The translations under genes were made by a program, and so were the position numbers. From contig JBHGNT010000149.1 in NCBI GenBank assembly GCA_043228905.1, positions 735 through 64,734 on the forward strand: a DNA stretch of 64,000 bases, in the 5' to 3' direction. The notes under the pieces are model-generated. The model had not been told where the DNA came from and made no database searches. It was given only the letters and a program-made list of their open reading frames with translations. The stretch comes from Azolla caroliniana. Its lineage: Eukaryota > Plantae > Polypodiophyta. Below, one piece after another: positions 13,731-55,200 of the stretch (position 1 is its first letter; each line of letters starts with the position of its first letter).

Positions 13731-13989
13731 GATTTTGAAACTCAGGTCGAGAGATATGAAGAAATTAGCAATCTTGAGGAGGGAGTTGAGAGGAGCCCTT
13801 GAGTACATTAAAATGTTCATACCTGGCGCGTGTGATATCGGTTTTTTGTGTTCAAACATGCGAATCGAAGCTAACAACGCTAGCTATTATATGGAACTAA
13901 AAAATCAAGATTTTGAAACTCAGGTCCAGAAATATGAAGAAATTAGCAATCTTGAGGAGGGAGTTGAGAGGAGCCCTTGAGTACATTAA

Positions 13990-16900
13990 AATGTTCATAC
14001 CTGGCTCGTGTGATATCGGATTTTTGTGTTCAAACATGCGAATCGAAGCTAACAATGCTAGCTATGACATGGTATTAAAAAATCAAGATTTTGAAACTCA
14101 AGTCGAGAGATATGAAGAAATTAGCAATCTTGAGGAGGGAGTTGAGAGGAGCCCTTGAGTAAATTAAAATGTTCATACCTGGCTCGTGTGATATCGGATT
14201 TTTGTGTTCAACCATGCGAATCAAAGCTAACAACGCTACCTATGATATGGAACTAAAAAATCATGATTTTGAAACTCAGGTCAAGAGATATGAAGAAATT
14301 AGCAATGTTGAGGAGGGAGTTGAGAGGAGCCCTTGAGTACATTAAAATGTTCATACCTGGCGCGTGTGATATCGGATTTTTGTGTTCAGACATGCGAATC
14401 GAAGCTAACAACGCTAGCTATTCTATGGAACTAAAAAATCATGATTTTGAAACTCAGGTCAAGAGATATGAAGAAATTAGCAATGTTGAGGAGGGAGTTG
14501 AGAGGAGCCCTTGAGTACATTAAAATGTTCATACCTGACGAAATTACCTAATTTGAGGAGGGAGTTGAGACGACCTAGTAGGTAAATTAAAATGTTCATA
14601 CCTGGCTCGTGTGATATCGGATTTTTGTGTTCAAACATGCGAATCGAAGCTAACAATGCTAGCTATGACATGGTATTAAAAAATCAAGATTTTGAAACTC
14701 AAGTCGAGAGATATGAAGAAATTAGCAATCTTGAGGAGGGAGTTGAGAGGAGCCCTTGAGTAAATTAAAATGTTCATACCTGGCTCGTGTGATATCGGAT
14801 TTTTGTGTTCAACCATGCGAATCAAAGCTAACAACGCTACCTATGATATGGAACTAAAAAATCATGATTTTGAAACTCAGGTCAAGAGATATGAAGAAAT
14901 TAGCAATGTTGAGGAGGGAGTTGAGAGGAGCCCTTGAGTACATTAAAATGTTCATACCTGGCGCGTGTGATATCTGATTTTTGTGTTCAAACATGCGAAT
15001 CGAAGCTAACAACGCTAGCTATTATATGGAACTAAAAAGTCAAGATTTTGAAACTCAGGTCGAGAGATATGAAGAAATTAGCAATCTTGAGGAGGGAGTT
15101 GAGAGGAGCCCTTGAGTACATTAAAATGTTCATACCTGGCGCGTGTGATATCGGATTTTTGTGTTCAGACATGCGAATCGAAGCTAACAACGCTAGCTAT
15201 TCTATGGAACTAAAAAATCAAGATTTTGAAATTGAGGTCGAGAGACATGAAGAAATTAGCAATCTTGAGGAGGGAGTTGAGAGGAGCCCTTGAGTATATT
15301 AAAATGTTTATACCTGGCTCGTGTGATATCTGATTTTTGTGTTCAAACATGCGAATCGAAGCTAACAACGCTAGCTATTATATGGAACTAAAAAGTCAAG
15401 ATTTTGACACTCAGGTCGAGAGACATGACGAAATTAGCAATCTTGAGGAGGGAGTTGAGAGGAGCCCTTGAGTAAATTAAAATGTTCATACCTGGCGCGT
15501 GTGATATCGGATGTTTGTGTTCAAACATGCGAATCGAAGCTAACAACGTTAGCTATGACATGGTATTAAAAAATCAAGATTTTGAAACTCAAGTCGAGAG
15601 ACATAACGAAATTACCTAATTTGAGGAGTGAGTTGAGAAGACCTAGTATGTAAATTAAAATGTTCATACCTGGCTCGTGTGATATCGGATTTTTGTGTTC
15701 AAACATGCGAATCGAAGCTAACAACGCTAGCTATTCTATGGAACTAAAAAATCAAGATTTTGAAACTCAGGTCGAGAGATATGAAGAAATTAGCAATCTT
15801 GAGGAGGGAGTTGAGAGGAGCCCTTGAGTACATTAAAATGTTCATACCTGGCGCGTGTGATATCTGATTTTTGTGTTCAAACATGCGAATCGAAGCTAAC
15901 AACGCTAGCTATTATATGGAACTAAAAAGTCAAGATTTTGAAACTCAGGTCGAGAGATATGAAGAAATTAGCAATCTTGAGGAGGGAGTTGAGAGGAGCC
16001 CTTGAGTACATTAAAATGTTCATACCTGGCGCGTGTGATATCGGATTTTTGTGTTCAAACATGCGAATCGAAGCTAACAACACTAGCTATTCTATGGAAC
16101 TAAAAAATCAAGATTTTGAAACTCAGGTCGAGAGATATGAAGAAATTAGCAATCTTGAGGAGGGAGTTGAGAGGAGCCCTTGAGTACATTAAAATGTTCA
16201 TACCTGGCTCGTGTGATATCGGATTTTTGTGTTCAAACATGCGAATCGAAGCTAACAATGCTAGCTATGACATGGTATTAAAAAATCATGATTTTGAAAC
16301 TCAGGTCGAGAGATATGAAGAAATTAGCAATCTTGAGGAGGGAGTTGAGAGGAGCCCTTGAGTACATTAAAATGTTCAGACCTGGCGCGTGTGATATCGG
16401 ATTTTTGTGTTCAAACATGCGAATCGAAGCTAACAACGCTAGCTATTATATGGAACAACGCTAGCTATTCATGATTTTGAAACTCAGGTCGAGAGACATG
16501 ACGAATTTACCAAATTGGAGGAGGGAGTTGAGAGGAGCCCTTGAGTATATTAAAATGTTCATACCTGGCGCGTGTGATATCGGATTTTTGTGTTCCAACA
16601 TGCGAATCGAAGCTAACAACGCTAGCTATGACATGCTATTAAAAAATCAAGATTTTGAAACTCAAGTCGAGAGACATGACGAAATTACCTAATTTGAGGA
16701 GGGAGTTGAGACGAGCCCTTGAGTACATTAAAATGTTCATACCTGGCTCGTGTGATATCGGATTTTTGTGTTCAAACATGCGAATGGAAGCTAACAACGC
16801 TAGCTATGACATGGTATTAAAAAATCAAGATTTTGAAACTCAAGTCGAGAGATATGAAGAAATTAGCAATCTTGAGGAGGGAGTTGAGAGGAGCCCTTGA

Positions 16901-19900
16901 GTAAATTAAAATGTTCATACCTGGCGCGTGTGATATCGGATGTTTGTGTTCAAACGTGGGAATCGAAGCTAACAACGTTAGCTATGACATGGTATTAAAA
17001 AATCAAGATTTTGAAACTCAAGTCGAGAGACATAACGAAATTACCTAATTTGAGGAGTGAGTTGAGAAGACCTAGTATGTAAATTAAAATGTTCATACCT
17101 GGCTCGTGTGATATCGGATTTTTGTGTTCAAACATGCGAATCGAAGCTAACAACGCTAGCTATTCTATGGAACTAAAAAATCATGATTTTGAAACTCAGG
17201 TCAAGAGATATGAAGAAATTAGCAATGTTGAGGAGGGAGTTGAGAGGAGCCCTTGAGTACATTAAAATGTTCATACCTGACGAAATTACCTAATTTGAGG
17301 AGGGAGTTGAGACGACCTAGTAGGTAAATTAAAATGTTCATACCTGGCTCGTGTGATATCGGATTTTTGTGTTCAAACATGCGAATCGAAGCTAACAATG
17401 CTAGCTATGACATGGTATTAAAAAATCAAGATTTTGAAACTCAAGTCGAGAGATATGAAGAAATTAGCAATCTTGAGGAGGGAGTTGAGAGGAGCCCTTG
17501 AGTAAATTAAAATGTTCATACCTGGCTCGTGTGATATCGGATTTTTGTGTTCAACCATGCGAATCAAAGCTAACAACGCTACCTATGATATGGAACTAAA
17601 AAATCATGATTTTGAAACTCAGGTCAAGAGATATGAAGAAATTAGCAATGTTGAGGAGGGAGTTGAGAGGAGCCCTTGAGTACATTAAAATGTTCATACC
17701 TGGCGCGTGTGATATCGGATTTTTGTGTTCAGACATGCGAATCGAAGCTAACAACGCTAGCTATTCTATGGAACTAAAAAATCATGATTTTGAAACTCAG
17801 GTCAAGAGATATGAAGAAATTAGCAATGTTGAGGAGGGAGTTGAGAGGAGCCCTTGAGTACATTAAAATGTTCATACCTGACGAAATTACCTAATTTGAG
17901 GAGGGAGTTGAGACGACCTAGTAGGTAAATTAAAATGTTCATACCTGGCTCGTGTGATATCGGATTTTTGTGTTCAAACATGCGAATCGAAGCTAACAAT
18001 GCTAGCTATGACATGGTATTAAAAAATCAAGATTTTGAAACTCAAGTCGAGAGATATGAAGAAATTAGCAATCTTGAGGAGGGAGTTGAGAGGAGCCCTT
18101 GAGTAAATTAAAATGTTCATACCTGGCTCGTGTGATATCGGATTTTTGTGTTCAACCATGCGAATCAAAGCTAACAACGCTACCTATGATATGGAACTAA
18201 AAAATCATGATTTTGAAACTCAGGTCAAGAGATATGAAGAAATTAGCAATGTTGAGGAGGGAGTTGAGAGGAGCCCTTGAGTACATTAAAATGTTCATAC
18301 CTGGCGCGTGTGATATCTGATTTTTGTGTTCAAACATGCGAATCGAAGCTAACAACGCTAGCTATTATATGGAACTAAAAAGTCAAGATTTTGAAACTCA
18401 GGTCGAGAGATATGAAGAAATTAGCAATCTTGAGGAGGGAGTTGAGAGGAGCCCTTGAGTACATTAAAATGTTCATACCTGGCGCGTGTGATATCGGATT
18501 TTTGTGTTCAGACATGCGAATCGAAGCTAACAACGCTAGCTATTCTATGGAACTAAAAAATCAAGATTTTGAAATTGAGGTCGAGAGACATGAAGAAATT
18601 AGCAATCTTGAGGAGGGAGTTGAGAGGAGCCCTTGAGTATATTAAAATGTTTATACCTGGCTCGTGTGATATCGGATTTTTGTGTTCAAACATGCGAATC
18701 GAAGCTAACAACGCTAGCTATGACATGGTATTAAAAAATCAAGATTTTGACACTCAGGTCGAGAGACATGACGAAATTAGCAATCTTGAGGAGGGAGTTG
18801 AGAGGAGCCCTTGAGTAAATTAAAATGTTCATACCTGGCGCGTGTGATATCGGATGTTTGTGTTCAAACATGCGAATCGAAGCTAACAACGTTAGCTATG
18901 ACATGGTATTAAAAAATCAAGATTTTGAAACTCAAGTCGAGAGACATAACGAAATTACCTAATTTGAGGAGTGAGTTGAGAAGACCTAGTATGTAAATTA
19001 AAATGTTCATACCTGGCTCGTGTGATATCGGATTTTTGTGTTCAAACATGCGAATCGAAGCTAACAACGCTAGCTATTCTATGGAACTAAAAAATCAAGA
19101 TTTTGAAACTCAGGTCGAGAGATATGAAGAAATTAGCAATCTTGAGGAGGGAGTTGAGAGGAGCCCTTGAGTACATTAAAATGTTCATACCTGGCGCGTG
19201 TGATATCTGATTTTTGTGTTCAAACATGCGAATCGAAGCTAACAACGCTAGCTATTATATGGAACTAAAAAGTCAAGATTTTGAAACTCAGGTCGAGAGA
19301 TATGAAGAAATTAGCAATCTTGAGGAGGGAGTTGAGAGGAGCCCTTGAGTACATTAAAATGTTCATACCTGGCGCGTGTGATATCGGATTTTTGTGTTCA
19401 AACATGCGAATCGAAGCTAACAACACTAGCTATTCTATGGAACTAAAAAATCAAGATTTTGAAACTCAGGTCGAGAGATATGAAGAAATTAGCAATCTTG
19501 AGGAGGGAGTTGAGAGGAGCCCTTGAGTACATTAAAATGTTCATACCTGGCTCGTGTGATATCGGATTTTTGTGTTCAAACATGCGAATCGAAGCTAACA
19601 ATGCTAGCTATGACATGGTATTAAAAAATCATGATTTTGAAACTCAGGTCGAGAGATATGAAGAAATTAGCAATCTTGAGGAGGGAGTTGAGAGGAGCCC
19701 TTGAGTACATTAAAATGTTCAGACCTGGCGCGTGTGATATCGGATTTTTGTGTTCAAACATGCGAATCGAAGCTAACAACGCTAGCTATTATATGGAACA
19801 ACGCTAGCTATTCATGATTTTGAAACTCAGGTCGAGAGACATGACGAAATTACCAAATTGGAGGAGGGAGTTGAGAGGAGCCCTTGAGTATATTAAAATG

Positions 19901-20263
19901 TTCATACCTGGCGCGTGTGATATCGGATTTTTGTGTTCCAACATGCGAATCGAAGCTAACAACGCTAGCTATGACATGCTATTAAAAAATCAAGATTTTG
20001 AAACTCAAGTCGAGAGACATGACGAAATTACCTAATTTGAGGAGGGAGTTGAGACGAGCCCTTGAGTACATTAAAATGTTCATACCTGGCTCGTGTGATA
20101 TCGGATTTTTGTGTTCAAACATGCGAATGGAAGCTAACAACGCTAGCTATGACATGGTATTAAAAAATCAAGATTTTGAAACTCAAGTCGAGAGATATGA
20201 AGAAATTAGCAATCTTGAGGAGGGAGTTGAGAGGAGCCCTTGAGTAAATTAAAATGTTCATAC
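13990..20263 (+). repeat. Higher-order duplication with 3343-bp offset (~13990-16920 and ~17333-20263)
   Basis: The 67-bp monomer occurs at 14538 and 17881 and the 183-bp monomer marker at 16454 and 19797. ORF-track variants match at 14263/17606 and 16655/19998. Boundaries are approximate. Confidence 0.85.
16454..16469 (+). repeat. Templated insertion defining a 183-bp monomer; 7 copies at 16454, 19797, 24074, 36995, 41272, 42701 and 44130
   Basis: ATGGAAC-TAAAAAA-TCATG is replaced by ATGGAAC-AACGCTAGCTAT-TCATG. AACAACGCTAGCTATT at 16454-16469 is an exact copy of 16432-16447. Net change is +5 bp. Confidence 0.92.
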
Positions 20264-23200
20264 CTGGCTCGTGTGATATCGGATTTTTGTGTTCAACCAT
20301 GCGAATCAAAGCTAACAACGGTACCTATGATATGGAACTAAAAAATCAAGATTTTGAAACTCAGGTCAAGAGATATGAAGAAATTAGCAATGTTGAGGAG
20401 GGAGTTGAGAGGAGCCCTTGAGTACATTAAAATGTTCATACCTGGCTCGTGTGATATCGGATTTTTGTGTTCAAACATGCGAATCGAAGCTAACAATGCT
20501 AGCTATGACATGGTATTAAAAAATCAAGATTTTGAAACTCAAGTCGAGAGACATGACGAAATTACCTAATTTGAGGAGGGAGTTGAGACGACCTAGTAGG
20601 TAAATTAAAATGTTCATACCTGGCTCGTGTGATATCGGATTTTTGTGTTCAAACATGCGAATCAAAGCTAACAACGCTAGCTATGATATGGAACTAAAAA
20701 ATCAAGATTTTGAAACTCAGGTCGAGAGATATGAAGAAATTAGCAATCTTGAGGAGGGAGTTGAGAGGAGCCCTTGAGTACATTAAAATGTTCATACCTG
20801 GCGCGTGTGATATCGTATTTTTGTGTTCAAACATGCGAATCGAAGCTAACAACGCTAGCTATTATATGGAACTAAAAAATCAAGATTTTGAAACTCAGGT
20901 CCAGAAATATGAAGAAATTAGCAATCTTGAGGAGGGAGTTGAGAGGAGCCCTTGAGTACATTAAAATGTTCATACCTGGCTCGTGTGATATCGGATTTTT
21001 GTGTTCAAACATGCGAATCGAAGCTAACAATGCTAGCTATGACATGGTATTAAAAAATCAAGATTTTGAAACTCAAGTCGAGAGACATGACGAAATTACC
21101 TAATTTGAGGAGGGAGTTGAGACGACCTAGTAGGTAAATTAAAATGTTCATACCTGGCTCGTGTGATATCGGATTTTTGTGTTCAAACATGCGAATCAAA
21201 GCTAACAACGCTAGCTATGATATGGAACTAAAAAATCAAGATTTTGAAACTCAGGTCGAGAGATATGAAGAAATTAGCAATCTTGAGGAGGGAGTTGAGA
21301 GGAGCCCTTGAGTACATTAAAATGTTCATACCTGGCTCGTGTGATATCGGATTTTTGTGTTCAAACATGCGAATCGAAGCTAACATTGCTAGCTATGACA
21401 TGGTATTAAAAAATCAAGATTTTGAAACTCAAGTCGAGAGATATGAAGAAATTAGCAATCTTGAGGAGGGAGTTGAGAGGAGCCCTTGCGTAAATTAAAA
21501 TGTTCATACCTGGCTCGTGTGATATCGGATTTTTGTGTTCAAACATGCGAATCGAAGCTAACAATGCTAGCTATGACATGGTATTAAAAAATCAAGATTT
21601 TGAAACTCAGGTCGAGAGATATGAAGAAATTAGCAATCTTGAGGAGGGAGTTGAGAGGAGCCCTTGAGTAAATTAAAATGTTCATACCTGGCTCGTGTGA
21701 TATCGGATTTTTGTGTTCAAACATGCGAATCGATGCTAACAACGCTAGCTATGATATGGTATTAAAAAATCATGATTTTGAAACTCAGGTCGAGAGACAT
21801 GACGAAATTACCAAATTGGAGGAGGGAGTTGAGAGGAGCCCTTGAGTATATTAAAATGTTCATACCTGGCGCGTGTGATATCGGATTTTTGTGTTCCAAC
21901 ATGCGAATCGAAGCTAACAACGCTAGCTATGACATGGTATTAAAAAATCAAGATTTTGAAACTCAGGTCGAGAGACATGAAGAAATTAGCAATCTTGAGG
22001 AGGGAGTTGAGAGGAGCCCTTGAGTAAATTAAAATGTTCATACCTGGCTCGTGTGATATCGGTTTTTTGTGTTCAAACATGCGAATCGAAGCTAAAAACG
22101 CTAGCTATGATATGGTATTCAAAAATCATGATTTCGAAATTGAGGTCGAGAGACATGAAGAAATTAGCAATCTTGAGGAGGGAGTTGAGAGGAGCCCTTG
22201 AGTACATTAAAATGTTCATACCTGGCTCGTGTGATATCGGATTTTTGTGTTCAAACATGCGAATCGAAGCTAACAACGCTAGCTATTATATGGAACTAAA
22301 AAATCAAGATTTTGAAACTCAGGTCCAGAAATATGAAGAAATTAGCAATCTTGAGGAGGGAGTTGAGAGGAGCCCTTGAGTACATTAAAATGTTCATACC
22401 TGGCTCGTGTGATATCGGATTTTTGTGTTCAAACATGTGAATCGAAGCTAACAACGCTAGCTATTCAATGGAACTAAAAAATCAAGATTTTGAAACTCAG
22501 GTCGAGAGATATGAAGAAATTAGCAATCTTGAGGAGGGAGTTGAGAGGAGCCCTTGAGTACATTAAAATGTTCATACCTGGCGCGTGTGATATCTGATTT
22601 TTGTGTTCAAACATGCGAATCGAAGCTAACAACGCTAGCTATTATATGGAACTAAAAAGTCAAGATTTTGAAACTCAGGTCGAGAGATATGAAGAAATTA
22701 GCAATCTTGAGGAGGGAGTTGAGAGGAGCCCTTGAGTACATTAAAATGTTCATACCTGGCGCGTGTGATATCGGATTTTTGTGTTCAGACATGCGAATCG
22801 AAGCTAACAACGCTAGCTATTCTATGGAACTAAAAAATCAAGATTTTGAAATTGAGGTCGAGAGACATGAAGAAATTAGCAATCTTGAGGAGGGAGTTGA
22901 GAGGAGCCCTTGAGTATATTAAAATGTTTATACCTGGCTCGTGTGATATCGGATTTTTGTGTTCAAACATGCGAATCGAAGCTAACAACGCTAGCTATGA
23001 CATGGTATTAAAAAATCAAGATTTTGACACTCAGGTCGAGAGACATGACGAAATTAGCAATCTTGAGGAGGGAGTTGAGAGGAGCCCTTGAGTAAATTAA
23101 AATGTTCATACCTGGCGCGTGTGATATCGGATGTTTGTGTTCAAACATGCGAATCGAAGCTAACAACGTTAGCTATGACATGGTATTAAAAAATCAAGAT

Positions 23201-26200
23201 TTTGAAACTCAAGTCGAGAGACATAACGAAATTACCTAATTTGAGGAGTGAGTTGAGAAGACCTAGTATGTAAATTAAAATGTTCATACCTGGCTCGTGT
23301 GATATCGGATTTTTGTGTTCAAACATGCGAATCGAAGCTAACAACGCTAGCTATTCTATGGAACTAAAAAATCAAGATTTTGAAACTCAGGTCGAGAGAT
23401 ATGAAGAAATTAGCAATCTTGAGGAGGGAGTTGAGAGGAGCCCTTGAGTACATTAAAATGTTCATACCTGGCGCGTGTGATATCTGATTTTTGTGTTCAA
23501 ACATGCGAATCGAAGCTAACAACGCTAGCTATTATATGGAACTAAAAAGTCAAGATTTTGAAACTCAGGTCGAGAGATATGAAGAAATTAGCAATCTTGA
23601 GGAGGGAGTTGAGAGGAGCCCTTGAGTACATTAAAATGTTCATACCTGGCGCGTGTGATATCGGATTTTTGTGTTCAAACATGCGAATCGAAGCTAACAA
23701 TGCTAGCTATGACATGGTATTAAAAAATCAAGATTTTGAAACTCAGGTCGAGAGATATGAAGAAATTAGCAATGTTGAGGAGGGAGTTGAGAGGAGCCCT
23801 TGAGTACATTAAAATGTTCATACCTGGCTCGTGTGATATCGGATTTTTGTGTTCAAACATGCGAATCGAAGCTAACAATGCTAGCTATGACATGGTATTA
23901 AAAAATCATGATTTTGAAACTCAGGTCGAGAGATATGAAGAAATTAGCAATCTTGAGGAGGGAGTTGAGAGGAGCCCTTGAGTACATTAAAATGTTCAGA
24001 CCTGGCGCGTGTGATATCGGATTTTTGTGTTCAAACATGCGAATCGAAGCTAACAACGCTAGCTATTATATGGAACAACGCTAGCTATTCATGATTTTGA
24101 AACTCAGGTCGAGAGACATGACGAAATTACCAAATTGGAGGAGGGAGTTGAGAGGAGCCCTTGAGTATATTAAAATGTTCATACCTGGCGCGTGTGATAT
24201 CGGATTTTTGTGTTCCAACATGCGAATCGAAGCTAACAACGCTAGCTATGACATGCTATTAAAAAATCAAGAATTTGAAACTCAAGTCGAGAGACATGAC
24301 GAAATTACCTAATTTGAGGAGGGAGTTGAGACGAGCCCTTGAGTACATTAAAATGTTCATACCTGGCTCGTGTGATATCGGATTTTTGTGTTCAAACATG
24401 CGAATGGAAGCTAACAATGCTAGCTATGACATGGTATTAAAAAATCAAGATTTTGAAACTCAAGTCGAGAGATATGAAGAAATTAGCAATCTTGAGGAGG
24501 GAGTTGAGAGGAGCCCTTGAGTAAATTAAAATGTTCATACCTGGCTCGTGTGATATCGGATTTTTGTGTTCAACCATGCGAATCAAAGCTAACAACGCTA
24601 CCTATGATATGGAACTAAAAAATCATGATTTTGAAACTCAGGTCAAGAGATATGAAGAAATTAGCAATGTTGAGGAGGGAGTTGAGAGGAGCCCTTGAGT
24701 ACATTAAAATGTTCATACCTGGCGCGTGTGATATCGGATTTTTGTGTTCAGACATGCGAATCGAAGCTAACAACGCTAGCTATTCTATGGAACTAAAAAA
24801 TCAAGATTTTGAAATTGAGGTCGAGAGACATGAAGAAATTAGCAATCTTGAGGAGGGAGTTGAGAGGAGCCCTTGAGTACATTAAAATGTTCATACCTGG
24901 CGCGTGTGATATCTGATTTTTGTGTTCAAACATGCGAATCGAAGCTAACAACGCTAGCTATTATATGGAACTAAAAAGTCAAGATTTTGAAACTCAGGTC
25001 GAGAGATATGAAGAAATTAGCAATCTTGAGGAGGGACTTGAGAGGAGCCCTTGAGTACATTAAAATGTTCATACCTGGCTCGTGTGATATCGGATTTTTG
25101 TGTTCAAACATGCGAATCAAAGCTAACAACGCTAGCTATGATATGGAACTAAAAAATCAAGATTTTGAAACTCAGGTCGAGAGATATGAAGAAATTAGCA
25201 ATCTTGAGGAGGGAGTTGAGAGGAGCCCTTGAGTACATTAAAATGTTCATACCTGGCTCGTGTGATATCGGATTTTTGTGTTCAAACATGCGAATCGAAG
25301 CTAACAATGCTAGCTATGACATGGTATTAAAAAATCAAGATTTTGAAACTCAAGTCGAGAGATATGAAGAAATTAGCAATCTTGAGGAGGGAGTTGAGAG
25401 GAGCCCTTGAGTAAATTAAAATGTTCATACCTGGCTCGTGTGATATCGGATTTTTGTGTTCAAACATGCGAATCGAAGCTAACAATGCTAGCTATGACAT
25501 GGTATTAAAAAATCAAGATTTTGAAACTCAGGTCGAGAGATATGAAGAAATTAGCAATCTTGAGGAGGGAGTTGAGAGGAGCCCTTGAGTAAATTAAAAT
25601 GTTCATACCTGGCTCGTGTGATATCGGATTTTTGTGTTTAAACATGCGAATCGAAGCTAACAACGCTAGCTATGATATGGTATTAAAAAATCATGATTTT
25701 GAAACTCAGGTCGATAGACATGACGAAATTAGCAATCTTGAGGAGGGAGTTGAGAGGAGCCCTTGAGTACATTAAAATGTTCATACCTGGCGCGTGTGAT
25801 ATCTGATTTTTGTGTTCAAACATGCGAATCGAAGCTAACAACGCTAGCTATTATATGGAACTAAAAAGTCAAGATTTTGAAACTCAGGTCGAGAGATATG
25901 AAGAAATTAGCAATCTTGAGGAGGGAGTTGAGAGGAGCCCTTGAGTACATTAAAATGTTCATACCTGGCGCGTGTGATATCGGATTTTTGTGTTCAGACA
26001 TGCGAATCGAAGCTAACAACGCTAGCTATTCTATGGAACTAAAAAATCAAGATTTTGAAATTGAGGTCGAGAGACATGAAGAAATTAGCAATCTTGAGGA
26101 GGGAGTTGAGAGGAGCCCTTGAGTATATTAAAATGTTTATACCTGGCTCGTGTGATATCGGATTTTTGTGTTCAAACATGCGAATCGAAGCTAACAACGC

Positions 26201-29200
26201 TAGCTATGACATGGTATTAAAAAATCAAGATTTTGAAACTCAGGTCGAGAGATATGAAGAAATTAGCAATCTTGAGGAGGGAGTTGAGAGGAGCCCTTGA
26301 GTACATTAAAATGTTCATACCTGGCTCGTGTGATATCGGATTTTTGTGTTCAAACATGCGAATCGAAGCTAACAACGCTAGCTATTATATGGAACTAAAA
26401 AGTCAAGATTTTGAAACTCAGGTCGAGAGATATGAAGAAATTAGCAATCTTGAGGAGGGAGTTGAGAGGAGCCCTTGAGTACATTAAAATGTTCATACCT
26501 GGCGCGTGTGATATCGGATTTTTGTGTTCAAACATGCGAATCGAAGCTAACAATGCTAGCTATGACATGGTATTAAAAAATCAAGATTTTGAAACTCAGG
26601 TCGAGAGATATGAAGAAATTAGCAATCTTGAGGAGGGAGTTGAGAGGAGCCCTTGAGTAAATTAAAATGTTCATACCTGGCGCGTGTGATATCGGATTTT
26701 TGTGTTCCAACATGCGAATCGAAGCTAACAACGCTAGCTATGACATGGTATTAAAAAATTAAGATTTTGAAACTCAGGTCGAGAGATATGAAGAAATTAG
26801 CAATCTTGAGGAGGGAGTTGAGAGGAGCCCTTGAGTACATTAAAATGTTCATACCTGGCTCGTGTGATATCGGATTTTTGTGTTCAAACATGCGAATCGA
26901 AGCTAACAATGCTAGCTATGACATGCTATTAAAAAATCAAGATTTTGAAACTCAGGTCGAGAGATATGAAGAAATTAGCAATCTTGAGGAGGGAGTTGAG
27001 AGGAGCCCTTGGGTAAATTAAAATGTTCATACCTGGCTCGTGTGATATCGGATTTTTGTGTTCAAACATGCGAATCGAAGCTAACAATGCTAGCTATGAC
27101 ATGGTATTAAAAAATCAAGATTTTGAAACTCAAGTCGAGAGATATGAAGAAATTAGCAATCTTGAGGAGGGAGTTGAGAGGAGCCCTTGAGTAAATTAAA
27201 ATGTTCATACCTGGTTCGTGTGATATCGGATTTTTGTGTTCAACCATGCGAATCAAAGCTAACAACGCTACCTATGATATGGAACTAAAAAATCATGATT
27301 TTGAAACTCAGGTCAAGAGATATGAAGAAATTAGCAATGTTGAGGAGGGAGTTGAGAGGAGCCCTTGAGTACATTAAAATGTTCATACCTGGCGCGTGTG
27401 ATATCTGATTTTTGTGTTCAAACATGCGAATCGAAGCTAACAACGCTAGCTATTATATGGAACTAAAAAGTCAAGATTTTGAAACTCAGGTCGAGAGATA
27501 TGAAGAAATTAGCAATCTTGAGGAGGGAGTTGAGAGGAGCCCTTGAGTACATTAAAATGTTCATACCTGGCGCGTGTGATATCGGATTTTTGTGTTCAAA
27601 CATGCGAATCGAAGCTAACAACGCTAGCTATTATATGGAACTAAAAAATCAAGATTTTGAAACTCAGGTCCAGAAATATGAAGAAATTAGCAATCTTGAG
27701 GAGGGAGTTGAGAGGAGCCCTTGAGTACATTAAAATGTTCATACCTGGCTCGTGTGATATCGGATTTTTGTGTTCAAACATGCGAATCGAAGCTAACAAT
27801 GCTAGCTATGACATGGTATTAAAAAATCAAGATTTTGAAACTCAAGTCGAGAGACATGACGAAATTACCTAATTTGAGGAGGGAGTTGAGACGACCTAGT
27901 AGGTAAATTAAAATGTTCATACCTGGCTCGTGTGATATCGGATTTTTGTGTTCAAACATGCGAATCAAAGCTAACAACGCTAGCTATGATATGGAACTAA
28001 AAAATCAAGATTTTGAAACTCAGGTCGAGAGATATGAAGAAATTAGCAATCTTGAGGAGGGAGTTGAGAGGAGCCCTTGAGTACATTAAAATGTTCATAC
28101 CTGGCGCGTGTGATATCGTATTTTTGTGTTCAAACATGCGAATCGAAGCTAACAACGCTAGCTATTATATGGAACTAAAAAATCAAGATTTTGAAACTCA
28201 GGTCCAGAAATATGAAGAAATTAGCAATCTTGAGGAGGGAGTTGAGAGGAGCCCTTGAGTACATTAAAATGTTCATACCTGGCTCGTGTGATATCGGATT
28301 TTTGTGTTCAAACATGCGAATCGAAGCTAACAATGCTAGCTATGACATGGTATTAAAAAATCAAGATTTTGAAACTCAAGTCGAGAGACATGACGAAATT
28401 ACCTAATTTGAGGAGGGAGTTGAGACGACCTAGTAGGTAAATTAAAATGTTCATACCTGGCTCGTGTGATATCGGATTTTTGTGTTCAAACATGCGAATC
28501 AAAGCTAACAACGCTAGCTATGATATGGAACTAAAAAATCAAGATTTTGAAACTCAGGTCGAGAGACATGAAGAAATTAGCAATCTTGAGGAGGGAGTTG
28601 AGAGGAGCCCTTGAGTACATTAAAATGTTCATACCTGGCTCGTGTGATATCGGATTTTTGTGTTCAAACATGCGAATCGAAGCTAACATTGCTAGCTATG
28701 ACATGGTATTAAAAAATCAAGATTTTGAAACTCAAGTCGAGAGATATGAAGAAATTAGCAATCTTGAGGAGGGAGTTGAGAGGAGCCCTTGCGTAAATTA
28801 AAATGTTCATACCTGGCTCGTGTGATATCGGATTTTTGTGTTCAAACATGCGAATCGAAGCTAACAATGCTAGCTATGACATGGTATTAAAAAATCAAGA
28901 TTTTGAAACTCAGGTCGAGAGATATGAAGAAATTAGCAATCTTGAGGAGGGAGTTGAGAGGAGCCCTTGAGTAAATTAAAATGTTCATACCTGGCTCGTG
29001 TGATATCGGATTTTTGTGTTCAAACATGCGAATCGAAGCTAACAACGCTAGCTATGATATGGTATTAAAAAATCATGATTTTGAAACTCAGGTCGAGAGA
29101 CATGACGAAATTACCAAATTGGAGGAGGGAGTTGAGAGGAGCCCTTGAGTATATTAAAATGTTCATACCTGGCGCGTGTGATATCGGATTTTTGTGTTCC

Positions 29201-34125: not shown

Positions 34126-34253
34126 CCCTAAACCCTAAACCCTAAACCTAAACCCTAAACCCTAAACCCTAAACCCTAAACCCTAAACCCTAAACCCTAA
34201 ACCCTAAACCCTAAACCCTAAACCCTAAACCCTAAACCCTAAACCCTAAACCC
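34126..34253 (-). repeat. Interstitial telomeric sequence (ITS), (CCCTAAA)18+CCC, inverted relative to the terminal telomere
   Basis: Seventeen perfect CCCTAAA units, one CCTAAA variant (34147-34152) and a final CCC; 128 bp in total. It reads (TTTAGGG)n on the minus strand. Left junction is gaggagCCCT|aaa and right junction is aaaccC|atggtatt. Confidence 0.99.
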
Positions 34254-37200: not shown

Positions 37201-40200
37201 ACTCAAGTCGAGAGACATGACGAAATTACCTAATTTGAGGAGGGAGTTGAGACGAGCCCTTGAGTACATTAAAATGTTCATACCTGGCTCGTGTGATATC
37301 GGATTTTTGTGTTCAAACATGCGAATGGAAGCTAACAACGCTAGCTATGACATGGTATTAAAAAATCAAGATTTTGAAACTCAAGTCGAGAGATATGAAG
37401 AAATTAGCAATCTTGAGGAGGGAGTTGAGAGGAGCCCTTGAGTAAATTAAAATGTTCATACCTGGCTCGTGTGATATCGGATTTTTGTGTTCAACCATGC
37501 GAATCAAAGCTAACAACGCTACCTATGATATGGAACTAAAAAATCAAGATTTTGAAACTCAGGTCAAGAGATATGAAGAAATTAGCAATGTTGAGGAGGG
37601 AGTTGAGAGGAGCCCTTGAGTACATTAAAATGTTCATACCTGGCTCGTGTGATATCGGATTTTTGTGTTCAAACATGCGAATCGAAGCTAACAATGCTAG
37701 CTATGACATGGTATTAAAAAATCAAGATTTTGAAACTCAAGTCGAGAGACATGACGAAATTACCTAATTTGAGGAGGGAGTTGAGACGACCTAGTAGGTA
37801 AATTAAAATGTTCATACCTGGCTCGTGTGATATCGGATTTTTGTGTTCAAACATGCGAATCAAAGCTAACAACGCTAGCTATGATATGGAACTAAAAAAT
37901 CAAGATTTTGAAACTCAGGTCGAGAGATATGAAGAAATTAGCAATCTTGAGGAGGGAGTTGAGAGGAGCCCTTGAGTACATTAAAATGTTCATACCTGGC
38001 GCGTGTGATATCGTATTTTTGTGTTCAAACATGCGAATCGAAGCTAACAACGCTAGCTATTATATGGAACTAAAAAATCAAGATTTTGAAACTCAGGTCC
38101 AGAAATATGAAGAAATTAGCAATCTTGAGGAGGGAGTTGAGAGGAGCCCTTGAGTACATTAAAATGTTCATACCTGGCTCGTGTGATATCGGATTTTTGT
38201 GTTCAAACATGCGAATCGAAGCTAACAATGCTAGCTATGACATGGTATTAAAAAATCAAGATTTTGAAACTCAAGTCGAGAGACATGACGAAATTACCTA
38301 ATTTGAGGAGGGAGTTGAGACGACCTAGTAGGTAAATTAAAATGTTCATACCTGGCTCGTGTGATATCGGATTTTTGTGTTCAAACATGCGAATCAAAGC
38401 TAACAACGCTAGCTATGATATGGAACTAAAAAATCAAGATTTTGAAACTCAGGTCGAGAGATATGAAGAAATTAGCAATCTTGAGGAGGGAGTTGAGAGG
38501 AGCCCTTGAGTACATTAAAATGTTCATACCTGGCTCGTGTGATATCGGATTTTTGTGTTCAAACATGCGAATCGAAGCTAACATTGCTAGCTATGACATG
38601 GTATTAAAAAATCAAGATTTTGAAACTCAAGTCGAGAGATATGAAGAAATTAGCAATCTTGAGGAGGGAGTTGAGAGGAGCCCTTGCGTAAATTAAAATG
38701 TTCATACCTGGCTCGTGTGATATCGGATTTTTGTGTTCAAACATGCGAATCGAAGCTAACAATGCTAGCTATGACATGGTATTAAAAAATCAAGATTTTG
38801 AAACTCAGGTCGAGAGATATGAAGAAATTAGCAATCTTGAGGAGGGAGTTGAGAGGAGCCCTTGAGTAAATTAAAATGTTCATACCTGGCTCGTGTGATA
38901 TCGGATTTTTGTGTTCAAACATGCGAATCGAAGCTAACAACGCTAGCTATGATATGGTATTAAAAAATCATGATTTTGAAACTCAGGTCGAGAGACATGA
39001 CGAAATTACCAAATTGGAGGAGGGAGTTGAGAGGAGCCCTTGAGTATATTAAAATGTTCATACCTGGCGCGTGTGATATCGGATTTTTGTGTTCCAACAT
39101 GCGAATCGAAGCTAACAACGCTAGCTATGACATGGTATTAAAAAATCAAGATTTTGAAACTCAGGTCGAGAGACATGAAGAAATTAGCAATCTTGAGGAG
39201 GGAGTTGAGAGGAGCCCTTGAGTAAATTAAAATGTTCATACCTGGCTCGTGTGATATCGGTTTTTTGTGTTCAAACATGCGAATCGAAGCTAAAAACGCT
39301 AGCTATGATATGGTATTCAAAAATCATGATTTCGAAATTGAGGTCGAGAGACATGAAGAAATTAGCAATCTTGAGGAGGGAGTTGAGAGGAGCCCTTGAG
39401 TACATTAAAATGTTCATACCTGGCTCGTGTGATATCGGATTTTTGTGTTCAAACATGCGAATCGAAGCTAACAACGCTAGCTATTATATGGAACTAAAAA
39501 ATCAAGATTTTGAAACTCAGGTCCAGAAATATGAAGAAATTAGCAATCTTGAGGAGGGAGTTGAGAGGAGCCCTTGAGTACATTAAAATGTTCATACCTG
39601 GCTCGTGTGATATCGGATTTTTGTGTTCAAACATGTGAATCGAAGCTAACAACGCTAGCTATTCAATGGAACTAAAAAATCAAGATTTTGAAACTCAGGT
39701 CGAGAGATATGAAGAAATTAGCAATCTTGAGGAGGGAGTTGAGAGGAGCCCTTGAGTACATTAAAATGTTCATACCTGGCGCGTGTGATATCTGATTTTT
39801 GTGTTCAAACATGCGAATCGAAGCTAACAACGCTAGCTATTATATGGAACTAAAAAGTCAAGATTTTGAAACTCAGGTCGAGAGATATGAAGAAATTAGC
39901 AATCTTGAGGAGGGAGTTGAGAGGAGCCCTTGAGTACATTAAAATGTTCATACCTGGCGCGTGTGATATCGGATTTTTGTGTTCAGACATGCGAATCGAA
40001 GCTAACAACGCTAGCTATTCTATGGAACTAAAAAATCAAGATTTTGAAATTGAGGTCGAGAGACATGAAGAAATTAGCAATCTTGAGGAGGGAGTTGAGA
40101 GGAGCCCTTGAGTATATTAAAATGTTTATACCTGGCTCGTGTGATATCGGATTTTTGTGTTCAAACATGCGAATCGAAGCTAACAACGCTAGCTATGACA

Positions 40201-43200
40201 TGGTATTAAAAAATCAAGATTTTGACACTCAGGTCGAGAGACATGACGAAATTAGCAATCTTGAGGAGGGAGTTGAGAGGAGCCCTTGAGTAAATTAAAA
40301 TGTTCATACCTGGCGCGTGTGATATCGGATGTTTGTGTTCAAACATGCGAATCGAAGCTAACAACGTTAGCTATGACATGGTATTAAAAAATCAAGATTT
40401 TGAAACTCAAGTCGAGAGACATAACGAAATTACCTAATTTGAGGAGTGAGTTGAGAAGACCTAGTATGTAAATTAAAATGTTCATACCTGGCTCGTGTGA
40501 TATCGGATTTTTGTGTTCAAACATGCGAATCGAAGCTAACAACGCTAGCTATTCTATGGAACTAAAAAATCAAGATTTTGAAACTCAGGTCGAGAGATAT
40601 GAAGAAAATAGCAATCTTGAGGAGGGAGTTGAGAGGAGCCCTTGAGTACATTAAAATGTTCATACCTGGCGCGTGTGATATCTGATTTTTGTGTTCAAAC
40701 ATGCGAATCGAAGCTAACAACGCTAGCTATTATATGGAACTAAAAAGTCAAGATTTTGAAACTCAGGTCGAGAGATATGAAGAAATTAGCAATCTTGAGG
40801 AGGGAGTTGAGAGGAGCCCTTGAGTACATTAAAATGTTCATACCTGGCGCGTGTGATATCGGATTTTTGTGTTCAAACATGCGAATCGAAGCTAACAACA
40901 CTAGCTATTCTATGGAACTAAAAAATCAAGATTTTGAAACTCAGGTCGAGAGATATGAAGAAATTAGCAATCTTGAGGAGGGAGTTGAGAGGAGCCCTTG
41001 AGTACATTAAAATGTTCATACCTGGCTCGTGTGATATCGGATTTTTGTGTTCAAACATGCGAATCGAAGCTAACAATGCTAGCTATGACATGGTATTAAA
41101 AAATCATGATTTTGAAACTCAGGTCGAGAGATATGAAGAAATTAGCAATCTTGAGGAGGGAGTTGAGAGGAGCCCTTGAGTACATTAAAATGTTCAGACC
41201 TGGCGCGTGTGATATCGGATTTTTGTGTTCAAACATGCGAATCGAAGCTAACAACGCTAGCTATTATATGGAACAACGCTAGCTATTCATGATTTTGAAA
41301 CTCAGGTCGAGAGACATGACGAAATTACCAAATTGGAGGAGGGAGTTGAGAGGAGCCCTTGAGTATATTAAAATGTTCATACCTGGCGCGTGTGATATCG
41401 GATTTTTGTGTTCCAACATGCGAATCGAAGCTAACAACGCTAGCTATGACATGCTATTAAAAAATCAAGAATTTGAAACTCAAGTCGAGAGACATGACGA
41501 AATTACCTAATTTGAGGAGGGAGTTGAGACGAGCCCTTGAGTACATTAAAATGTTCATACCTGGCTCGTGTGATATCGGATTTTTGTGTTCAAACATGCG
41601 AATGGAAGCTAACAATGCTAGCTATGACATGGTATTAAAAAATCAAGATTTTGAAACTCAAGTCGAGAGATATGAAGAAATTAGCAATCTTGAGGAGGGA
41701 GTTGAGAGGAGCCCTTGAGTAAATTAAAATGTTCATACCTGGCTCGTGTGATATCGGATTTTTGTGTTCAACCATGCGAATCAAAGCTAACAACGCTACC
41801 TATGATATGGAACTAAAAAATCATGATTTTGAAACTCAGGTCAAGAGATATGAAGAAATTAGCAATGTTGAGGAGGGAGTTGAGAGGAGCCCTTGAGTAC
41901 ATTAAAATGTTCATACCTGGCGCGTGTGATATCGGATTTTTGTGTTCAGACATGCGAATCGAAGCTAACAACGCTAGCTATTCTATGGAACTAAAAAATC
42001 AAGATTTTGAAATTGAGGTCGAGAGACATGAAGAAATTAGCAATCTTGAGGAGGGAGTTGAGAGGAGCCCTTGAGTACATTAAAATGTTCATACCTGGCG
42101 CGTGTGATATCTGATTTTTGTGTTCAAACATGCGAATCGAAGCTAACAACGCTAGCTATTATATGGAACTAAAAAGTCAAGATTTTGAAACTCAGGTCGA
42201 GAGATATGAAGAAATTAGCAATCTTGAGGAGGGACTTGAGAGGAGCCCTTGAGTACATTAAAATGTTCATACCTGGCTCGTGTGATATCGGATTTTTGTG
42301 TTCAAACATGCGAATCAAAGCTAACAACGCTAGCTATTCTATGGAACTAAAAAATCAAGATTTTGAAACTCAGGTCGAGAGATATGAAGAAATTAGCAAT
42401 CTTGAGGAGGGAGTTGAGAGGAGCCCTTGAGTACATTAAAATGTTCATACCTGGCTCGTGTGATATCGGATTTTTGTGTTCAAACATGCGAATCGAAGCT
42501 AACAATGCTAGCTATGACATGGTATTAAAAAATCATGATTTTGAAACTCAGGTCGAGAGATATGAAGAAATTAGCAATCTTGAGGAGGGAGTTGAGAGGA
42601 GCCCTTGAGTACATTAAAATGTTCAGACCTGGCGCGTGTGATATCGGATTTTTGTGTTCAAACATGCGAATCGAAGCTAACAACGCTAGCTATTATATGG
42701 AACAACGCTAGCTATTCATGATTTTGAAACTCAGGTCGAGAGACATGACGAAATTACCAAATTGGAGGAGGGAGTTGAGAGGAGCCCTTGAGTATATTAA
42801 AATGTTCATACCTGGCGCGTGTGATATCGGATTTTTGTGTTCCAACATGCGAATCGAAGCTAACAACGCTAGCTATGACATGCTATTAAAAAATCAAGAA
42901 TTTGAAACTCAAGTCGAGAGACATGACGAAATTACCTAATTTGAGGAGGGAGTTGAGACGAGCCCTTGAGTACATTAAAATGTTCATACCTGGCTCGTGT
43001 GATATCGGATTTTTGTGTTCAAACATGCGAATGGAAGCTAACAATGCTAGCTATGACATGGTATTAAAAAATCAAGATTTTGAAACTCAAGTCGAGAGAT
43101 ATGAAGAAATTAGCAATCTTGAGGAGGGAGTTGAGAGGAGCCCTTGAGTAAATTAAAATGTTCATACCTGGCTCGTGTGATATCGGATTTTTGTGTTCAA

Positions 43201-52200: not shown

Positions 52201-55200
52201 TTTGAGGAGTGAGTTGAGAAGACCTAGTAGGTAAATTAAAATGTTCATACCTGGCTCGTGTGATATCGGATTTTTGTGTTCAAACATGCGAATCGAAGCT
52301 AACAACGCTAGTTATTCTATGGAACTAAAAAATCAAGATTTTGAAACTCAGGTCGAGAGACATGAAGAAATTAGCAATCTTGAGGAGGGAGTTGAGACAA
52401 CCTAGTAGGTAAATTAAAATGTTCATACCTGGCTCGTGTGATATCGGATTTTTGTGTTCAAACATGCGAATCAAAGCTAACAACGCTAGCTATGATATGG
52501 AACTAAAAAATCAAGATTTTGAAACTCAGGTCGAGAGATATGAAGAAATTAGCAATCTTGAGGAGGGAGTTGAGAGGAGCCCTTGAGTACATTAAAATGT
52601 TCATACCTGGCTCCTGTGATATCGGATTTTTGTGTTCAAACATGCGAATCGAAGCTAACAACGGTAGCTATTATATGGAACTAAAAAATCAAGATTTTGA
52701 AACTCAGGTCCAGAAATATGAAGAAATTAGCAATCTTGAGGAGGGAGTTGAGAGGAGCCCTTGAGTACATTAAAATGTTCATACCTGGCTCGTGTGATAT
52801 CGGATTTTTGTGTTCAAACATGTGAATCGAAGCTAACAACGCTAGCTATTCTATGGAACTAAAAAATTAAGATTTTGAAACTCAGGTCGAGAGATATGAA
52901 GAAATTAGCAATCTTGAGGAGGGAGTTGAGAGGAGCCCTTGAGTACATTAAAATGTTCATACCTGGCGCGTGTGATATCGGATTTTTGTGTTCAAACATG
53001 CGAATCGAAGCTAACAACAGTAGCTATTATATGGAACTAAAAAATCAAGATTTTGAAACTCAGGTCCAGAAATATGAAGAAATTAGCAATCTTGAGGAGG
53101 GAGTTGAGAGGAGCCCTTGAGTACATTAAAATGTTCATACCTGGCGCGTGTGATATCTGATTTTTGTGTTCAAACATGCGAATCGAAGCTAACAACGCTA
53201 GCTATTATATGGAACTAAAAAGTCAAGATTTTGAAACTCAGGTCGAGAGATATGAAGAAATTAGCAATCTTGAGGAGGGAGTTGAGAGGAGCCCTTGAGT
53301 ACATTAAAATGTTCATACCTGGCTCGTGTGATATCGGATTTTTGTGTTCAAACATGCGAATCAAAGCTAACAACGCTAGCTATGATATGGAACTAAAAAA
53401 TCAAGATTTTGAAACTCAGGTCGAGAGATATGAAGAAATTAGCAATCTTGAGGAGGGAGTTGAGAGGAGCCCTTGAGTACATTAAAATGTTCATACCTGG
53501 CTCGTGTGATATCGGATTTTTGTGTTCAAACATGCGAATCGAAGCTAACAATGCTAGCTATGACATGGTATTAAAAAATCAAGATTTTGAAACTCAAGTC
53601 GAGAGATATGAAGAAATTAGCAATCTTGAGGAGGGAGTTGAGAGGAGCCCTTGAGTAAATTAAAATGTTCATACCTGGCTCGTGTGATATCGGATTTTTG
53701 TGTTCAAACATGCGAATCGAAGCTAACAATGCTAGCTATGACATGGTATTAAAAAATCAAGATTTTGAAACTCAGGTCGAGAGATATGAAGAAATTAGCA
53801 ATCTTGAGGAGGGAGTTGAGAGGAGCCCTTGGGTAAATTAAAATGTTCATACCTGGCTCGTGTGATATCGGATTTTTGTGTTCAAACATGCGAATCGAAG
53901 CTAACAACGCTAGCTATGATATGGTATTAAAAAATCATGATTTTGAAACTCAGGTCGAGAGACATGACGAAATTAGCAATCTTGAGGAGGGAGTTGAGAG
54001 GAGCCCTTGAGTATATTAAAATGTTCATACCTGGCGCGTGTGATATCGGATTTTTGTGTTCCAACATGCGAATCGAAGCTAACAACGCTAGCTATGACAT
54101 GGTATTAAAAAATCAAGATTTTGAAACTCAGGTCGAGAGACATGAAGAAATTAGCAATCTTGAGGAGGGAGTTGAGAGGAGCCCTTGAGTAAATTAAAAT
54201 GTTCATACCTGGCTCGTGTGATATCGGTTTTTTGTGTTCAAACATGCGAATCGAAGCTAACAACGCTAGCTATTATATGGAACTAAAAAGTCAAGATTTT
54301 GAAACTCAGGTCGAGAGATATGAAGAAATTAGCAATCTTGAGGAGGGAGTTGAGAGGAGCCCTTGAGTACATTAAGATGTTCATACCTGGCTCGTATGAT
54401 ATCGGATTTTTGTGTTCAAACATGCGAATCAAAGCTAACAACGCTAGCTATGATATGGAACTAAAAAATCAAGATTTTGAAACTCAGGTCCAGAAATATG
54501 AAGAAATTAGCAATCTTGAGGAGGGAGTTGAGAGGAGCCCTTGAGTATATTAAAATGTTCATACCTGGCGCGTGTGATATCGGATTTTTGTGTTCCAACA
54601 TGCGAATCGAAGCTAACAACGCTAGCTATGACATGGTATTAAAAAATCAAGATTTTGAAACTCAGGTCGAGAGACATGAAGAAATTAGCAATCTTGAGGA
54701 GGGAGTTGAGAGGAGCCCTTGAGTAAATTAAAATGTTCATACCTGGCTCGTGTGATATCGGTTTTTTGTGTTCAAACATGCGAATCGAAGCTAACAACGC
54801 TAGCTATTATATGGAACTAAAAAGTCAAGATTTTGAAACTCAGGTCGAGAGATATGAAGAAATTAGCAATCTTGAGGAGGGAGTTGAGAGGAGCCCTTGA
54901 GTACATTAAGATGTTCATACCTGGCTCGTATGATATCGGATTTTTGTGTTCAAACATGCGAATCAAAGCTAACAACGCTAGCTATGATATGGAACTAAAA
55001 AATCAAGATTTTGAAACTCAGGTCGAGAGATATGAAGAAATTAGCAATCTTGAGGAGGGAGTTGAGAGGAGCCCTTGAGTACATTAAAATGTTCATACCT
55101 GGCTCGTGTGATATCGGATTTTTGTGTTCAAACATGCGAATCGAAGCTAACAATGCTAGCTATGACATGGTATTAAAAAATCATGATTTTGAAACTCAGG

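What the first reader, a model, noticed from the sequence alone, without database searches (positions are those of the whole stretch)
13746..54185. Inverted telomeric tract sits exactly at the junction of a ~20-kb tandem duplication: possible telomerase-coupled satellite amplification
Seen: sequence left of the ITS (ending in CCCT at 34129) is collinear with sequence ending in CCCT at 54185 (offset 20056), where the satellite simply continues as TGAGTAAATT. Sequence right of the ITS (from ~34287) restarts at the variant pattern found at ~13746 (offset 20541). The layout is X-A-[CCCTAAA]18-A'-Y-telomere, so the ITS is not a simple insertion into one monomer but the seam of a large duplication. 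Inference: a fragment from the sister chromatid or homolog, or an excised piece, broke near the start of A and had telomeric repeats added to its proximal end. It was then joined to a chromatid broken at the end of A, adding ~20 kb of satellite in one step. This would be a route to satellite expansion through telomere healing plus end-joining rather than unequal crossover, and it leaves a traceable scar. The first ~33 bp after the ITS (ATGGTATT...CAAGTC) differ from 13713-13745, so the donor start was a different monomer type or was later converted.
Basis: partly seen in the sequence, partly recalled or inferred. Interest (0 to 1): 0.9.

Follow-up and report, generated by a model that had tools for sequence, protein, structure and literature searches.

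The report
Telomere scar at satellite duplication seam
Near a plant chromosome end, a short backwards-facing run of telomere repeats sits exactly where a 20-kb block of satellite DNA was duplicated; it is probably the scar of one broken-chromosome repair, a known kind of event rarely seen intact inside a satellite array.

Summary
Confirmed in the assembly, not in reads. The window is a 178-bp satellite array capped abruptly by a plant telomere at 60734. A 128-bp telomeric tract of opposite polarity (34126-34253) separates two copies of a ~20-kb block (A 13713-34129, A' 34254-54185; 22 substitutions in 17 kb, plus later 3343-bp and 2x1429-bp changes). It is the only recent out-of-register seam; chance co-location is about 2-6%. 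The seam has three joints, not two: a 4-nt overlap into the tract, a 1-nt overlap out of it onto 33-93 bp of a foreign monomer type, then an in-register switch to the monomer at 13713. Best reading (0.45): one repair event in which a 3' end switched template, gained telomere repeats and was annealed to A's end. Rivals: copying a pre-existing telomere-satellite junction (0.25), an older tract plus unequal exchange between homologs (0.15), artefact (0.08). Telomere insertion at breaks and neotelomere-then-fusion are known; other duplications here lack telomere DNA, so this is one scar, not a shown general route. The scan's unchecked notes list similar tracts on other pieces of this genome.

The parts
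1..60733 (+). 178-bp satellite array, 337 monomers (120 distinct, mean 7% apart), all in one orientation, 38% GC, many kb-scale recent duplications
13713..34129 (+). Block A, 20417 bp, 114 monomer starts; ends at monomer position 87
34126..34253 (-). Interstitial telomeric tract, 18.4 heptamers, G-rich strand on -, inverted relative to the terminal telomere; one 6-nt unit; 123 bp (34130-34252) cannot be satellite-derived
34126..34129 (+). 4-nt overlap shared by the end of A and the tract (3.9% of satellite positions offer 4 nt or more)
34253..34253 (+). 1-nt overlap: all 54 monomers that share the next 33 bp are preceded by C
34254..34346 (+). Foreign monomer segment: at least 33 and at most 93 bp from a common monomer type (54 copies share the first 33 bp, 25 the first 93); the in-register switch to the 13713 monomer lies in 34287-34346
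34254..54185 (+). Block A', 19932 bp, 112 monomer starts; no telomeric tract at its end
13985..20268 (+). 3343-bp-offset complex tandem duplication present in A (13985-16925 and 17328-20268), single in A'
40901..45195 (+). 1429-bp unit in three tandem copies in A', single in A; seams in register, no telomere DNA
54186..60733 (+). Distal satellite Y, continuous in register with A'
60734..64000 (+). Terminal telomere, 465 units, joined directly to monomer position 50 with 1-nt overlap and no degenerate proximal zone

Best explanation
The tract and the duplication come from one break-repair event, readable as the history of a single 3' end on the - strand. (1) A chromatid (sister or homolog) broke within the monomer at 13713, positions 34-93; the distal piece carried A', Y and the telomere. 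(2) Its resected 3' end invaded another monomer of a common type in register and copied 33-93 nt. (3) The released end, now ending in G, was extended by telomerase for about 18 repeats, an aborted healing. (4) The new G-rich 3' tail annealed by 4 nt to the 3' end of a second chromatid broken at the end of A, and fill-in sealed the joint (theta-type end joining). Net gain about 20 kb, 112 monomers, with the register broken once. Later in-register indels, conversions and point mutations made A and A' differ. Shown: layout, three joints, overlaps, polarity, divergence. Inferred: the order of steps, the enzymes, and that it was one event.
For: Tract at a tandem-duplication seam, about 2-6% by chance. 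A' has no tract at its end, so the tract arose with the duplication or on another haplotype. Polarity: telomerase writes only the G strand 5' to 3' (established knowledge), which makes the right-hand piece the primer, and both junction 3' ends then face each other with 4 complementary bases. The foreign segment is derived, not ancestral, abuts the tract, and supplies a 1-nt in-register overlap that the 13713 monomer would not give. The terminal telomere is also joined straight onto a cut monomer with a sharp boundary, the signature of new telomeres on broken Arabidopsis CEN178 (10.64898/2026.07.24.740321). Precedent for neotelomere followed by fusion: 10.1101/2023.11.30.569101. Tract nearly pure (1 variant in 18 units; terminal 23 in 465), compatible with the young age of A/A'.
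Against: Needs two breaks and three joints in one cell lineage. The 1-nt overlap is weak evidence (a third of monomers are preceded by C). The same sequence follows equally from a + strand end copying an existing telomere-satellite junction. No reads. One event only. A/A' differences could be allelic rather than accumulated afterwards.
Confidence: 0.45

Rival explanations
1. Templated insertion by replication template switching (MMBIR/FoSTeS-like), no telomerase at this event: the + strand 3' end at 34129 primed by 4 nt on the G strand of a telomere or internal tract elsewhere, copied about 124 nt plus 33-93 nt of the satellite next to it, then switched in register to the monomer at 13713 and recopied A.
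For: Explains tract and foreign segment as one copied unit with only two switches; 4-nt primer overlap. Earlier unchecked notes say other ends and internal sites of this genome have telomere DNA joined directly to this kind of satellite, so donors may exist. Complex tandem duplications with mosaic units are common in CEN178 (10.1101/2025.06.02.657473); FoSTeS at chromosome ends in PMC8034613.
Against: Needs a donor with the satellite in the opposite orientation to its telomere and cut at position 1; none in this window (all monomers in one orientation, terminal joint at position 50). Priming must fall within about 130 nt of the donor junction of a 3-kb telomere unless the donor is itself short.
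Confidence: 0.25
2. Two steps: the tract was first inserted at a break on one haplotype with a small duplication or deletion (for instance back to the matching monomer at 33509, 620 bp upstream); later an unequal exchange or break-induced switch to a tract-free homolog fell within 93 bp of the tract, perhaps because the tract is fragile.
For: Monomers matching all 93 bp lie nearby (33509, 56413). Short tracts inserted at breaks with flanking duplication or deletion are well documented (PMC7215372). In-register exchanges are the ordinary event in this array. A and A' differ on both sides as two alleles would.
Against: The exchange must fall in a 60-bp interval next to the tract, a few percent at most given 9 recent seams in 60 kb, and must use a homolog without the tract.
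Confidence: 0.15
3. Assembly artefact: chimeric read or a join of two haplotypes or chromosome ends.
For: No read support obtained; pure satellite is hard to assemble; the A/A' differences are what two haplotypes would show.
Against: A join would need a molecule with a 128-bp telomere at its left end while real telomeres here are over 3 kb; both flanks belong to this same array (1521- and 1585-bp exact matches); overlaps of 4 and 1 nt and a mosaic monomer are not what overlap-based assemblers create. Even a misjoin needs a real A-end/tract/A-start junction.
Confidence: 0.08
4. The tract was written by a retroelement reverse transcriptase (endonuclease-less Penelope-like element or telomeric RNA as template) patching the break, leaving only telomere repeats.
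For: Earlier unchecked notes report such elements inside the 178-bp satellite of this genome with telomere repeats at their junctions.
Against: No element-derived base lies at either junction; everything is satellite or telomere repeat.
Confidence: 0.07

Closest known systems
Short interstitial telomeric sequences inserted at double-strand breaks (Giulotto group; PMC7215372)
   Same: Short, nearly pure tract; 1-6 nt in register at the break; flanking duplication or complex change
   Different: There the duplications are short target-site repeats in unique DNA of mammals; here a 20-kb block inside a plant satellite, with a foreign monomer piece
Neotelomere followed by arm fusion, inverted telomere repeats at a breakpoint (Tan et al., 10.1101/2023.11.30.569101)
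   Same: Inverted tract after the breakpoint, shorter than normal telomeres, read as a new telomere fused to an internal site
   Different: Somatic cancer events joining distant arms with tracts of 0.65-4 kb in the examples read; here a 128-bp tract producing a direct tandem duplication, apparently inherited
Register-preserving (complex) tandem duplications of Arabidopsis CEN178 (Dong et al., 10.1101/2025.06.02.657473)
   Same: kb-scale duplications, mosaic units at breakpoints, short conversion tracts (mean 58.5 bp); describes the other seams of this window
   Different: All 56 indels there kept the register, insertions added 1-31 units; this one adds 112 units, breaks the register and carries telomere DNA
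CRISPR centromere fission in Arabidopsis (10.64898/2026.07.24.740321)
   Same: Break in a 178-bp satellite gave a sharp-edged new telomere and a large terminal tandem duplication within 2-3 generations
   Different: 196-kb blocks, read as homology-driven; a 125-bp interval at the junction is mentioned but not described as telomeric in the text read
CenTel mosaic satellites of Arabidopsis ITRs (10.64898/2026.05.10.723265)
   Same: About 180-bp telomere islands abutting a truncated satellite monomer; the authors invoke ectopic telomerase healing, BIR or MMEJ for the unseen first step
   Different: CenTel units are degenerate and amplified over hundreds of kb; here a single, pure, unamplified unit with no pre-existing heptamer in the monomer
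Chlamydomonas telomerase-mutant ends (10.1101/2023.01.23.525193)
   Same: A tandem duplication holding a 9-repeat internal tract, and an internal tract with a 4-bp microhomology junction
   Different: Arose without telomerase, which shows that such tracts do not by themselves prove telomerase action

Membership tests
Short ITS inserted at a DNA break | Short, nearly exact tract at an internal site | tested here: met
   128 bp, 98% matches, 26 kb from the terminal telomere
Short ITS inserted at a DNA break | An empty site exists for comparison | tested here: met
   Paralogous empty site at 54185 with 1521 bp exact match; an empty allele in another plant not tested
Short ITS inserted at a DNA break | Bases in register with the repeat at the break | tested here: met
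   4 nt left, 1 nt right; the 1-nt overlap is weak
Telomerase-healed end later fused | G strand runs 5' to 3' away from the healed piece | tested here: met
   G strand on -, running leftwards from A'
Telomerase-healed end later fused | Repeats made by telomerase rather than copied from DNA | not testable with these tools
   No telomerase-RNA-derived flank; sequence cannot tell synthesis from copying
Telomerase-healed end later fused | Single molecules span both junctions | tested here: inconclusive
Register-preserving satellite tandem duplication (homology-directed) | Only whole monomers added, periodicity kept | tested here: not met
   211-bp unit, jump from monomer position 87 to 1
Register-preserving satellite tandem duplication (homology-directed) | Mosaic monomer at the breakpoint | tested here: met
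   Two-parent monomer at 34254, switch in positions 34-93
End-to-end telomere fusion / BFB scar | Head-to-head telomere repeats or inverted flanks | tested here: not met
   One polarity only; no reverse-orientation monomer
CenTel mosaic satellite | Telomere-island plus satellite unit amplified in tandem | tested here: not met
   Single tract in 60.7 kb
Centromeric satellite | CENH3 occupancy | not testable with these tools
   Needs ChIP data; monomer size and higher-order structure are only suggestive

The most novel reading that the evidence does not exclude
In this plant, whose chromosome ends appear to run straight from a centromere-like satellite into the telomere, aborted telomerase healing followed by microhomology joining is a recurrent way of making large, register-breaking satellite duplications and of seeding telomere-satellite mosaic units; this locus would be the unamplified first step that the CenTel model for Arabidopsis postulates but has not seen.
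Probability: 0.15. Interest if true: 0.75.

Novelty: new variant of a known kind. Interest (0 to 1): 0.48.

Why it matters
Measured satellite mutations in plants keep the monomer register and are put down to homology-directed repair. This is a natural, base-resolved case of a 112-monomer gain whose seam breaks the register and carries telomere DNA, so it points to a second, rarer class of event and gives a marker by which such events can be counted across chromosome ends and accessions. It also resembles the missing first step for telomere-satellite mosaic repeats. As it stands it is one scar in one assembly, without read support, and each component step has precedent.

Tried and rejected
Species not identified: paper searches for Selaginella and for a 178-bp satellite with Penelope elements were blank or uninformative. 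Rejected: simple insertion into one monomer (flanks come from places 20 kb apart); head-to-head fusion or BFB (no inversion); growth of the tract from a telomere-like motif in the monomer (longest match 5 nt); duplication of an A that already had the tract (A' lacks it); conversion of the 13713 monomer in A (ancestral state). No protein tools were used: the region is pure tandem repeat.
Full report
Setting. The window is the last 64 kb of a plant chromosome arm or contig. Bases 1-60733 are one 178-bp satellite in a single orientation (337 monomers, 120 distinct, mean 7% apart, 38% GC), and 60734-64000 is a plant-type heptamer telomere with the G strand on +. The species is not known to me; runs that hold the satellite are coded, and earlier unchecked notes call the genome a non-seed plant.

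A C-strand telomeric tract of 18.4 units lies at 34126-34253, with one 6-nt unit; no full telomere heptamer occurs elsewhere in the satellite. Sequence ending at 34129 matches sequence ending at 54185 exactly for 1521 bp, and there the satellite goes on normally. Sequence from 34287 matches 13746 exactly for 1585 bp, the next best match being 96 bp. The monomer string shows A (13713-34129, 20417 bp) and A' (34254-54185, 19932 bp) to be the same block on three diagonals: +20541, +17198 and +20056. A has an extra 3343 bp and A' two extra copies of a 1429-bp unit, which together account for the 485-bp length difference. Over 17041 aligned bases there are 22 substitutions in 9 events: six single changes and three clusters (15331-15395, 23701-23774, 32558-32608), the first two with the look of conversion tracts. 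Seven changes are private, three in A and four in A'. With Arabidopsis rates borrowed and a genome-wide rate from memory, this is roughly 3,000-30,000 generations; it may instead be the distance between two alleles.

Is the co-location more than chance? The array is full of recent duplications (offsets 4339, 7721, 1669, 3343, 4277, 7303, 1429, 2848, 1602, 1068 and others). Nine sites are seams between matches of 1 kb or more and cover 5.9% of the array at +-200 bp; three are of tandem-duplication type, about 2%. So co-location is unlikely by chance but not overwhelmingly so. Stronger are two logical points: A' has no tract at its end, so the tract did not precede a duplication from the same haplotype; and this is the only recent seam that breaks the register (211-bp unit, position 87 to position 1). 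The 245-bp and 183-bp monomers are older variants copied seven times each.

Anatomy of the seam. There are three joints. Left: the last 4 bases of A are also the first 4 of the tract; 3.9% of satellite positions offer such an overlap. Middle: the tract meets monomer position 1. Right: the monomer at 34254 is a perfect two-parent mosaic, its first 33-93 bp from a common type (54 monomers share 33 bp, 25 share 93) and the rest from the unique monomer at 13713. The monomer at 13713 has the same bases at positions 5, 7 and 33 as the four paralogous monomers that precede the same run at 1831, 4323, 9552 and 12044, so the foreign piece in A' is the derived state. All 54 candidate donors are preceded by C, which gives a 1-nt overlap with the tract, whereas the 13713 context would not; this is weak, since a third of monomers are preceded by C. 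A later conversion covering just these bases is improbable: three clusters in 17 kb give about 1% (my estimate), and the tract removes homology on the left.

Mechanism. Telomerase writes only the G strand (established knowledge). Here that strand is - and runs leftwards, so the primer would be the left end of A'. Read along that one 3' end, the seam is: break in the 13713 monomer, in-register invasion of another monomer and 33-93 nt of synthesis, about 18 telomere repeats, then annealing of the last 4 G-strand bases to the complementary 3' end of a chromatid broken at the end of A. That is my best reading (0.45). Read along the + strand, the same letters are: priming by 4 nt on a telomere G strand elsewhere, copying through that telomere's junction with satellite, and an in-register switch back to 13713 (0.25); this needs a donor junction, which is not in the window. 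A two-step history, with a tract-bearing haplotype recombining with a tract-free homolog within 60 bp of the tract, is possible if the tract is fragile (0.15). An artefact (0.08) or a retroelement enzyme (0.07) is less likely. The terminal telomere is itself joined to a cut monomer (position 50, 1-nt overlap) with no degenerate zone: 4 of its 23 variant units lie before 61200 and the rest after 62680. New telomeres on cut CEN178 look like this (10.64898/2026.07.24.740321), and wheat healing sites have 2-4 nt of homology (as cited in PMC12094224). So telomere addition onto this satellite has happened at this end independently of the tract.

What could not be tested. No reads were laid. The run search shows the satellite in three studies of one organism but says nothing on the junctions; shares near 0.15 are probably telomere words alone (inference).

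Comparison. Each step has precedent. Short tracts inserted at breaks with bases in register and flanking duplications: PMC7215372. A new telomere later fused to an internal site, seen as inverted repeats after a breakpoint: 10.1101/2023.11.30.569101. A tandem duplication with a 9-repeat internal tract in a telomerase mutant alga: 10.1101/2023.01.23.525193, a warning that such tracts can be moved without telomerase. Satellite duplications in Arabidopsis lines all kept the register and added 1-31 units: 10.1101/2025.06.02.657473; this event fails that test at the tract and meets it at the third joint. Arabidopsis CenTel units pair telomere islands with a truncated monomer and their origin is ascribed, without a direct example, to ectopic healing, BIR or MMEJ: 10.64898/2026.05.10.723265. 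I found no paper describing a telomeric tract at the seam of a large duplication inside a natural plant satellite, in a library that lacks most subscription journals.

Earlier notes of this scan. The same tract was flagged from an overlapping window with the same idea (s1-497303), which is not independent. Notes on other pieces list an internal tract at a switch in satellite variants, a possible healing scar in the satellite, telomere heptamers at a 320-bp duplication junction, abrupt telomere-satellite joints, and endonuclease-less Penelope-like elements at breaks. I could not check them; they suggest recurrence and possible donors.

Verdict. It is a new variant of a known kind: telomere DNA captured at a break, here coupled to a 20-kb satellite gain. 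It does not show a general route of satellite growth. Interest 0.48.

Noticed in passing
window 60680-60800: Terminal telomere joins monomer position 50 directly with a 1-nt overlap and no degenerate zone; both this joint and the internal tract begin at the G run of the repeat. Looks like a recently healed end.
   Followed up: partly
window 20321, 21734, 30412, 40608, 47671, 52614, 52664: All seven private differences between A and A' are transversions (four are C/G swaps); the array as a whole has 50 transition to 64 transversion alleles. Could be error-prone repair synthesis or consensus error.
   Followed up: partly
window 696, 5035, 12756, 14425, 17167, 17768, 34966: Seven 245-bp monomers holding an old, diverged 67-bp internal duplication: an earlier out-of-register event that has since spread.
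   Followed up: partly
window 16272, 19615, 23892, 36813, 41090, 42519, 43948: Seven 183-bp monomers ending in a 5-bp repeat of the next monomer's start.
   Followed up: partly
window 1-13700: Nested recent duplications left of A (offsets 4339, 7721, 12060, 1669), without telomere DNA; about 39 kb of the 60.7-kb array is explained by copies of 500 bp or more of earlier sequence.
   Followed up: partly
window 63669: The terminal telomere has one unit with the same two-G variant as the internal tract, flanked by enough perfect units to match the whole tract; probably coincidence or homopolymer error, as distal telomere turns over.
   Followed up: partly
window 15331-15395 and 23701-23774: Clustered A/A' differences of 65-75 bp whose alleles occur in other monomers: likely non-allelic gene conversion tracts.
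   Followed up: partly
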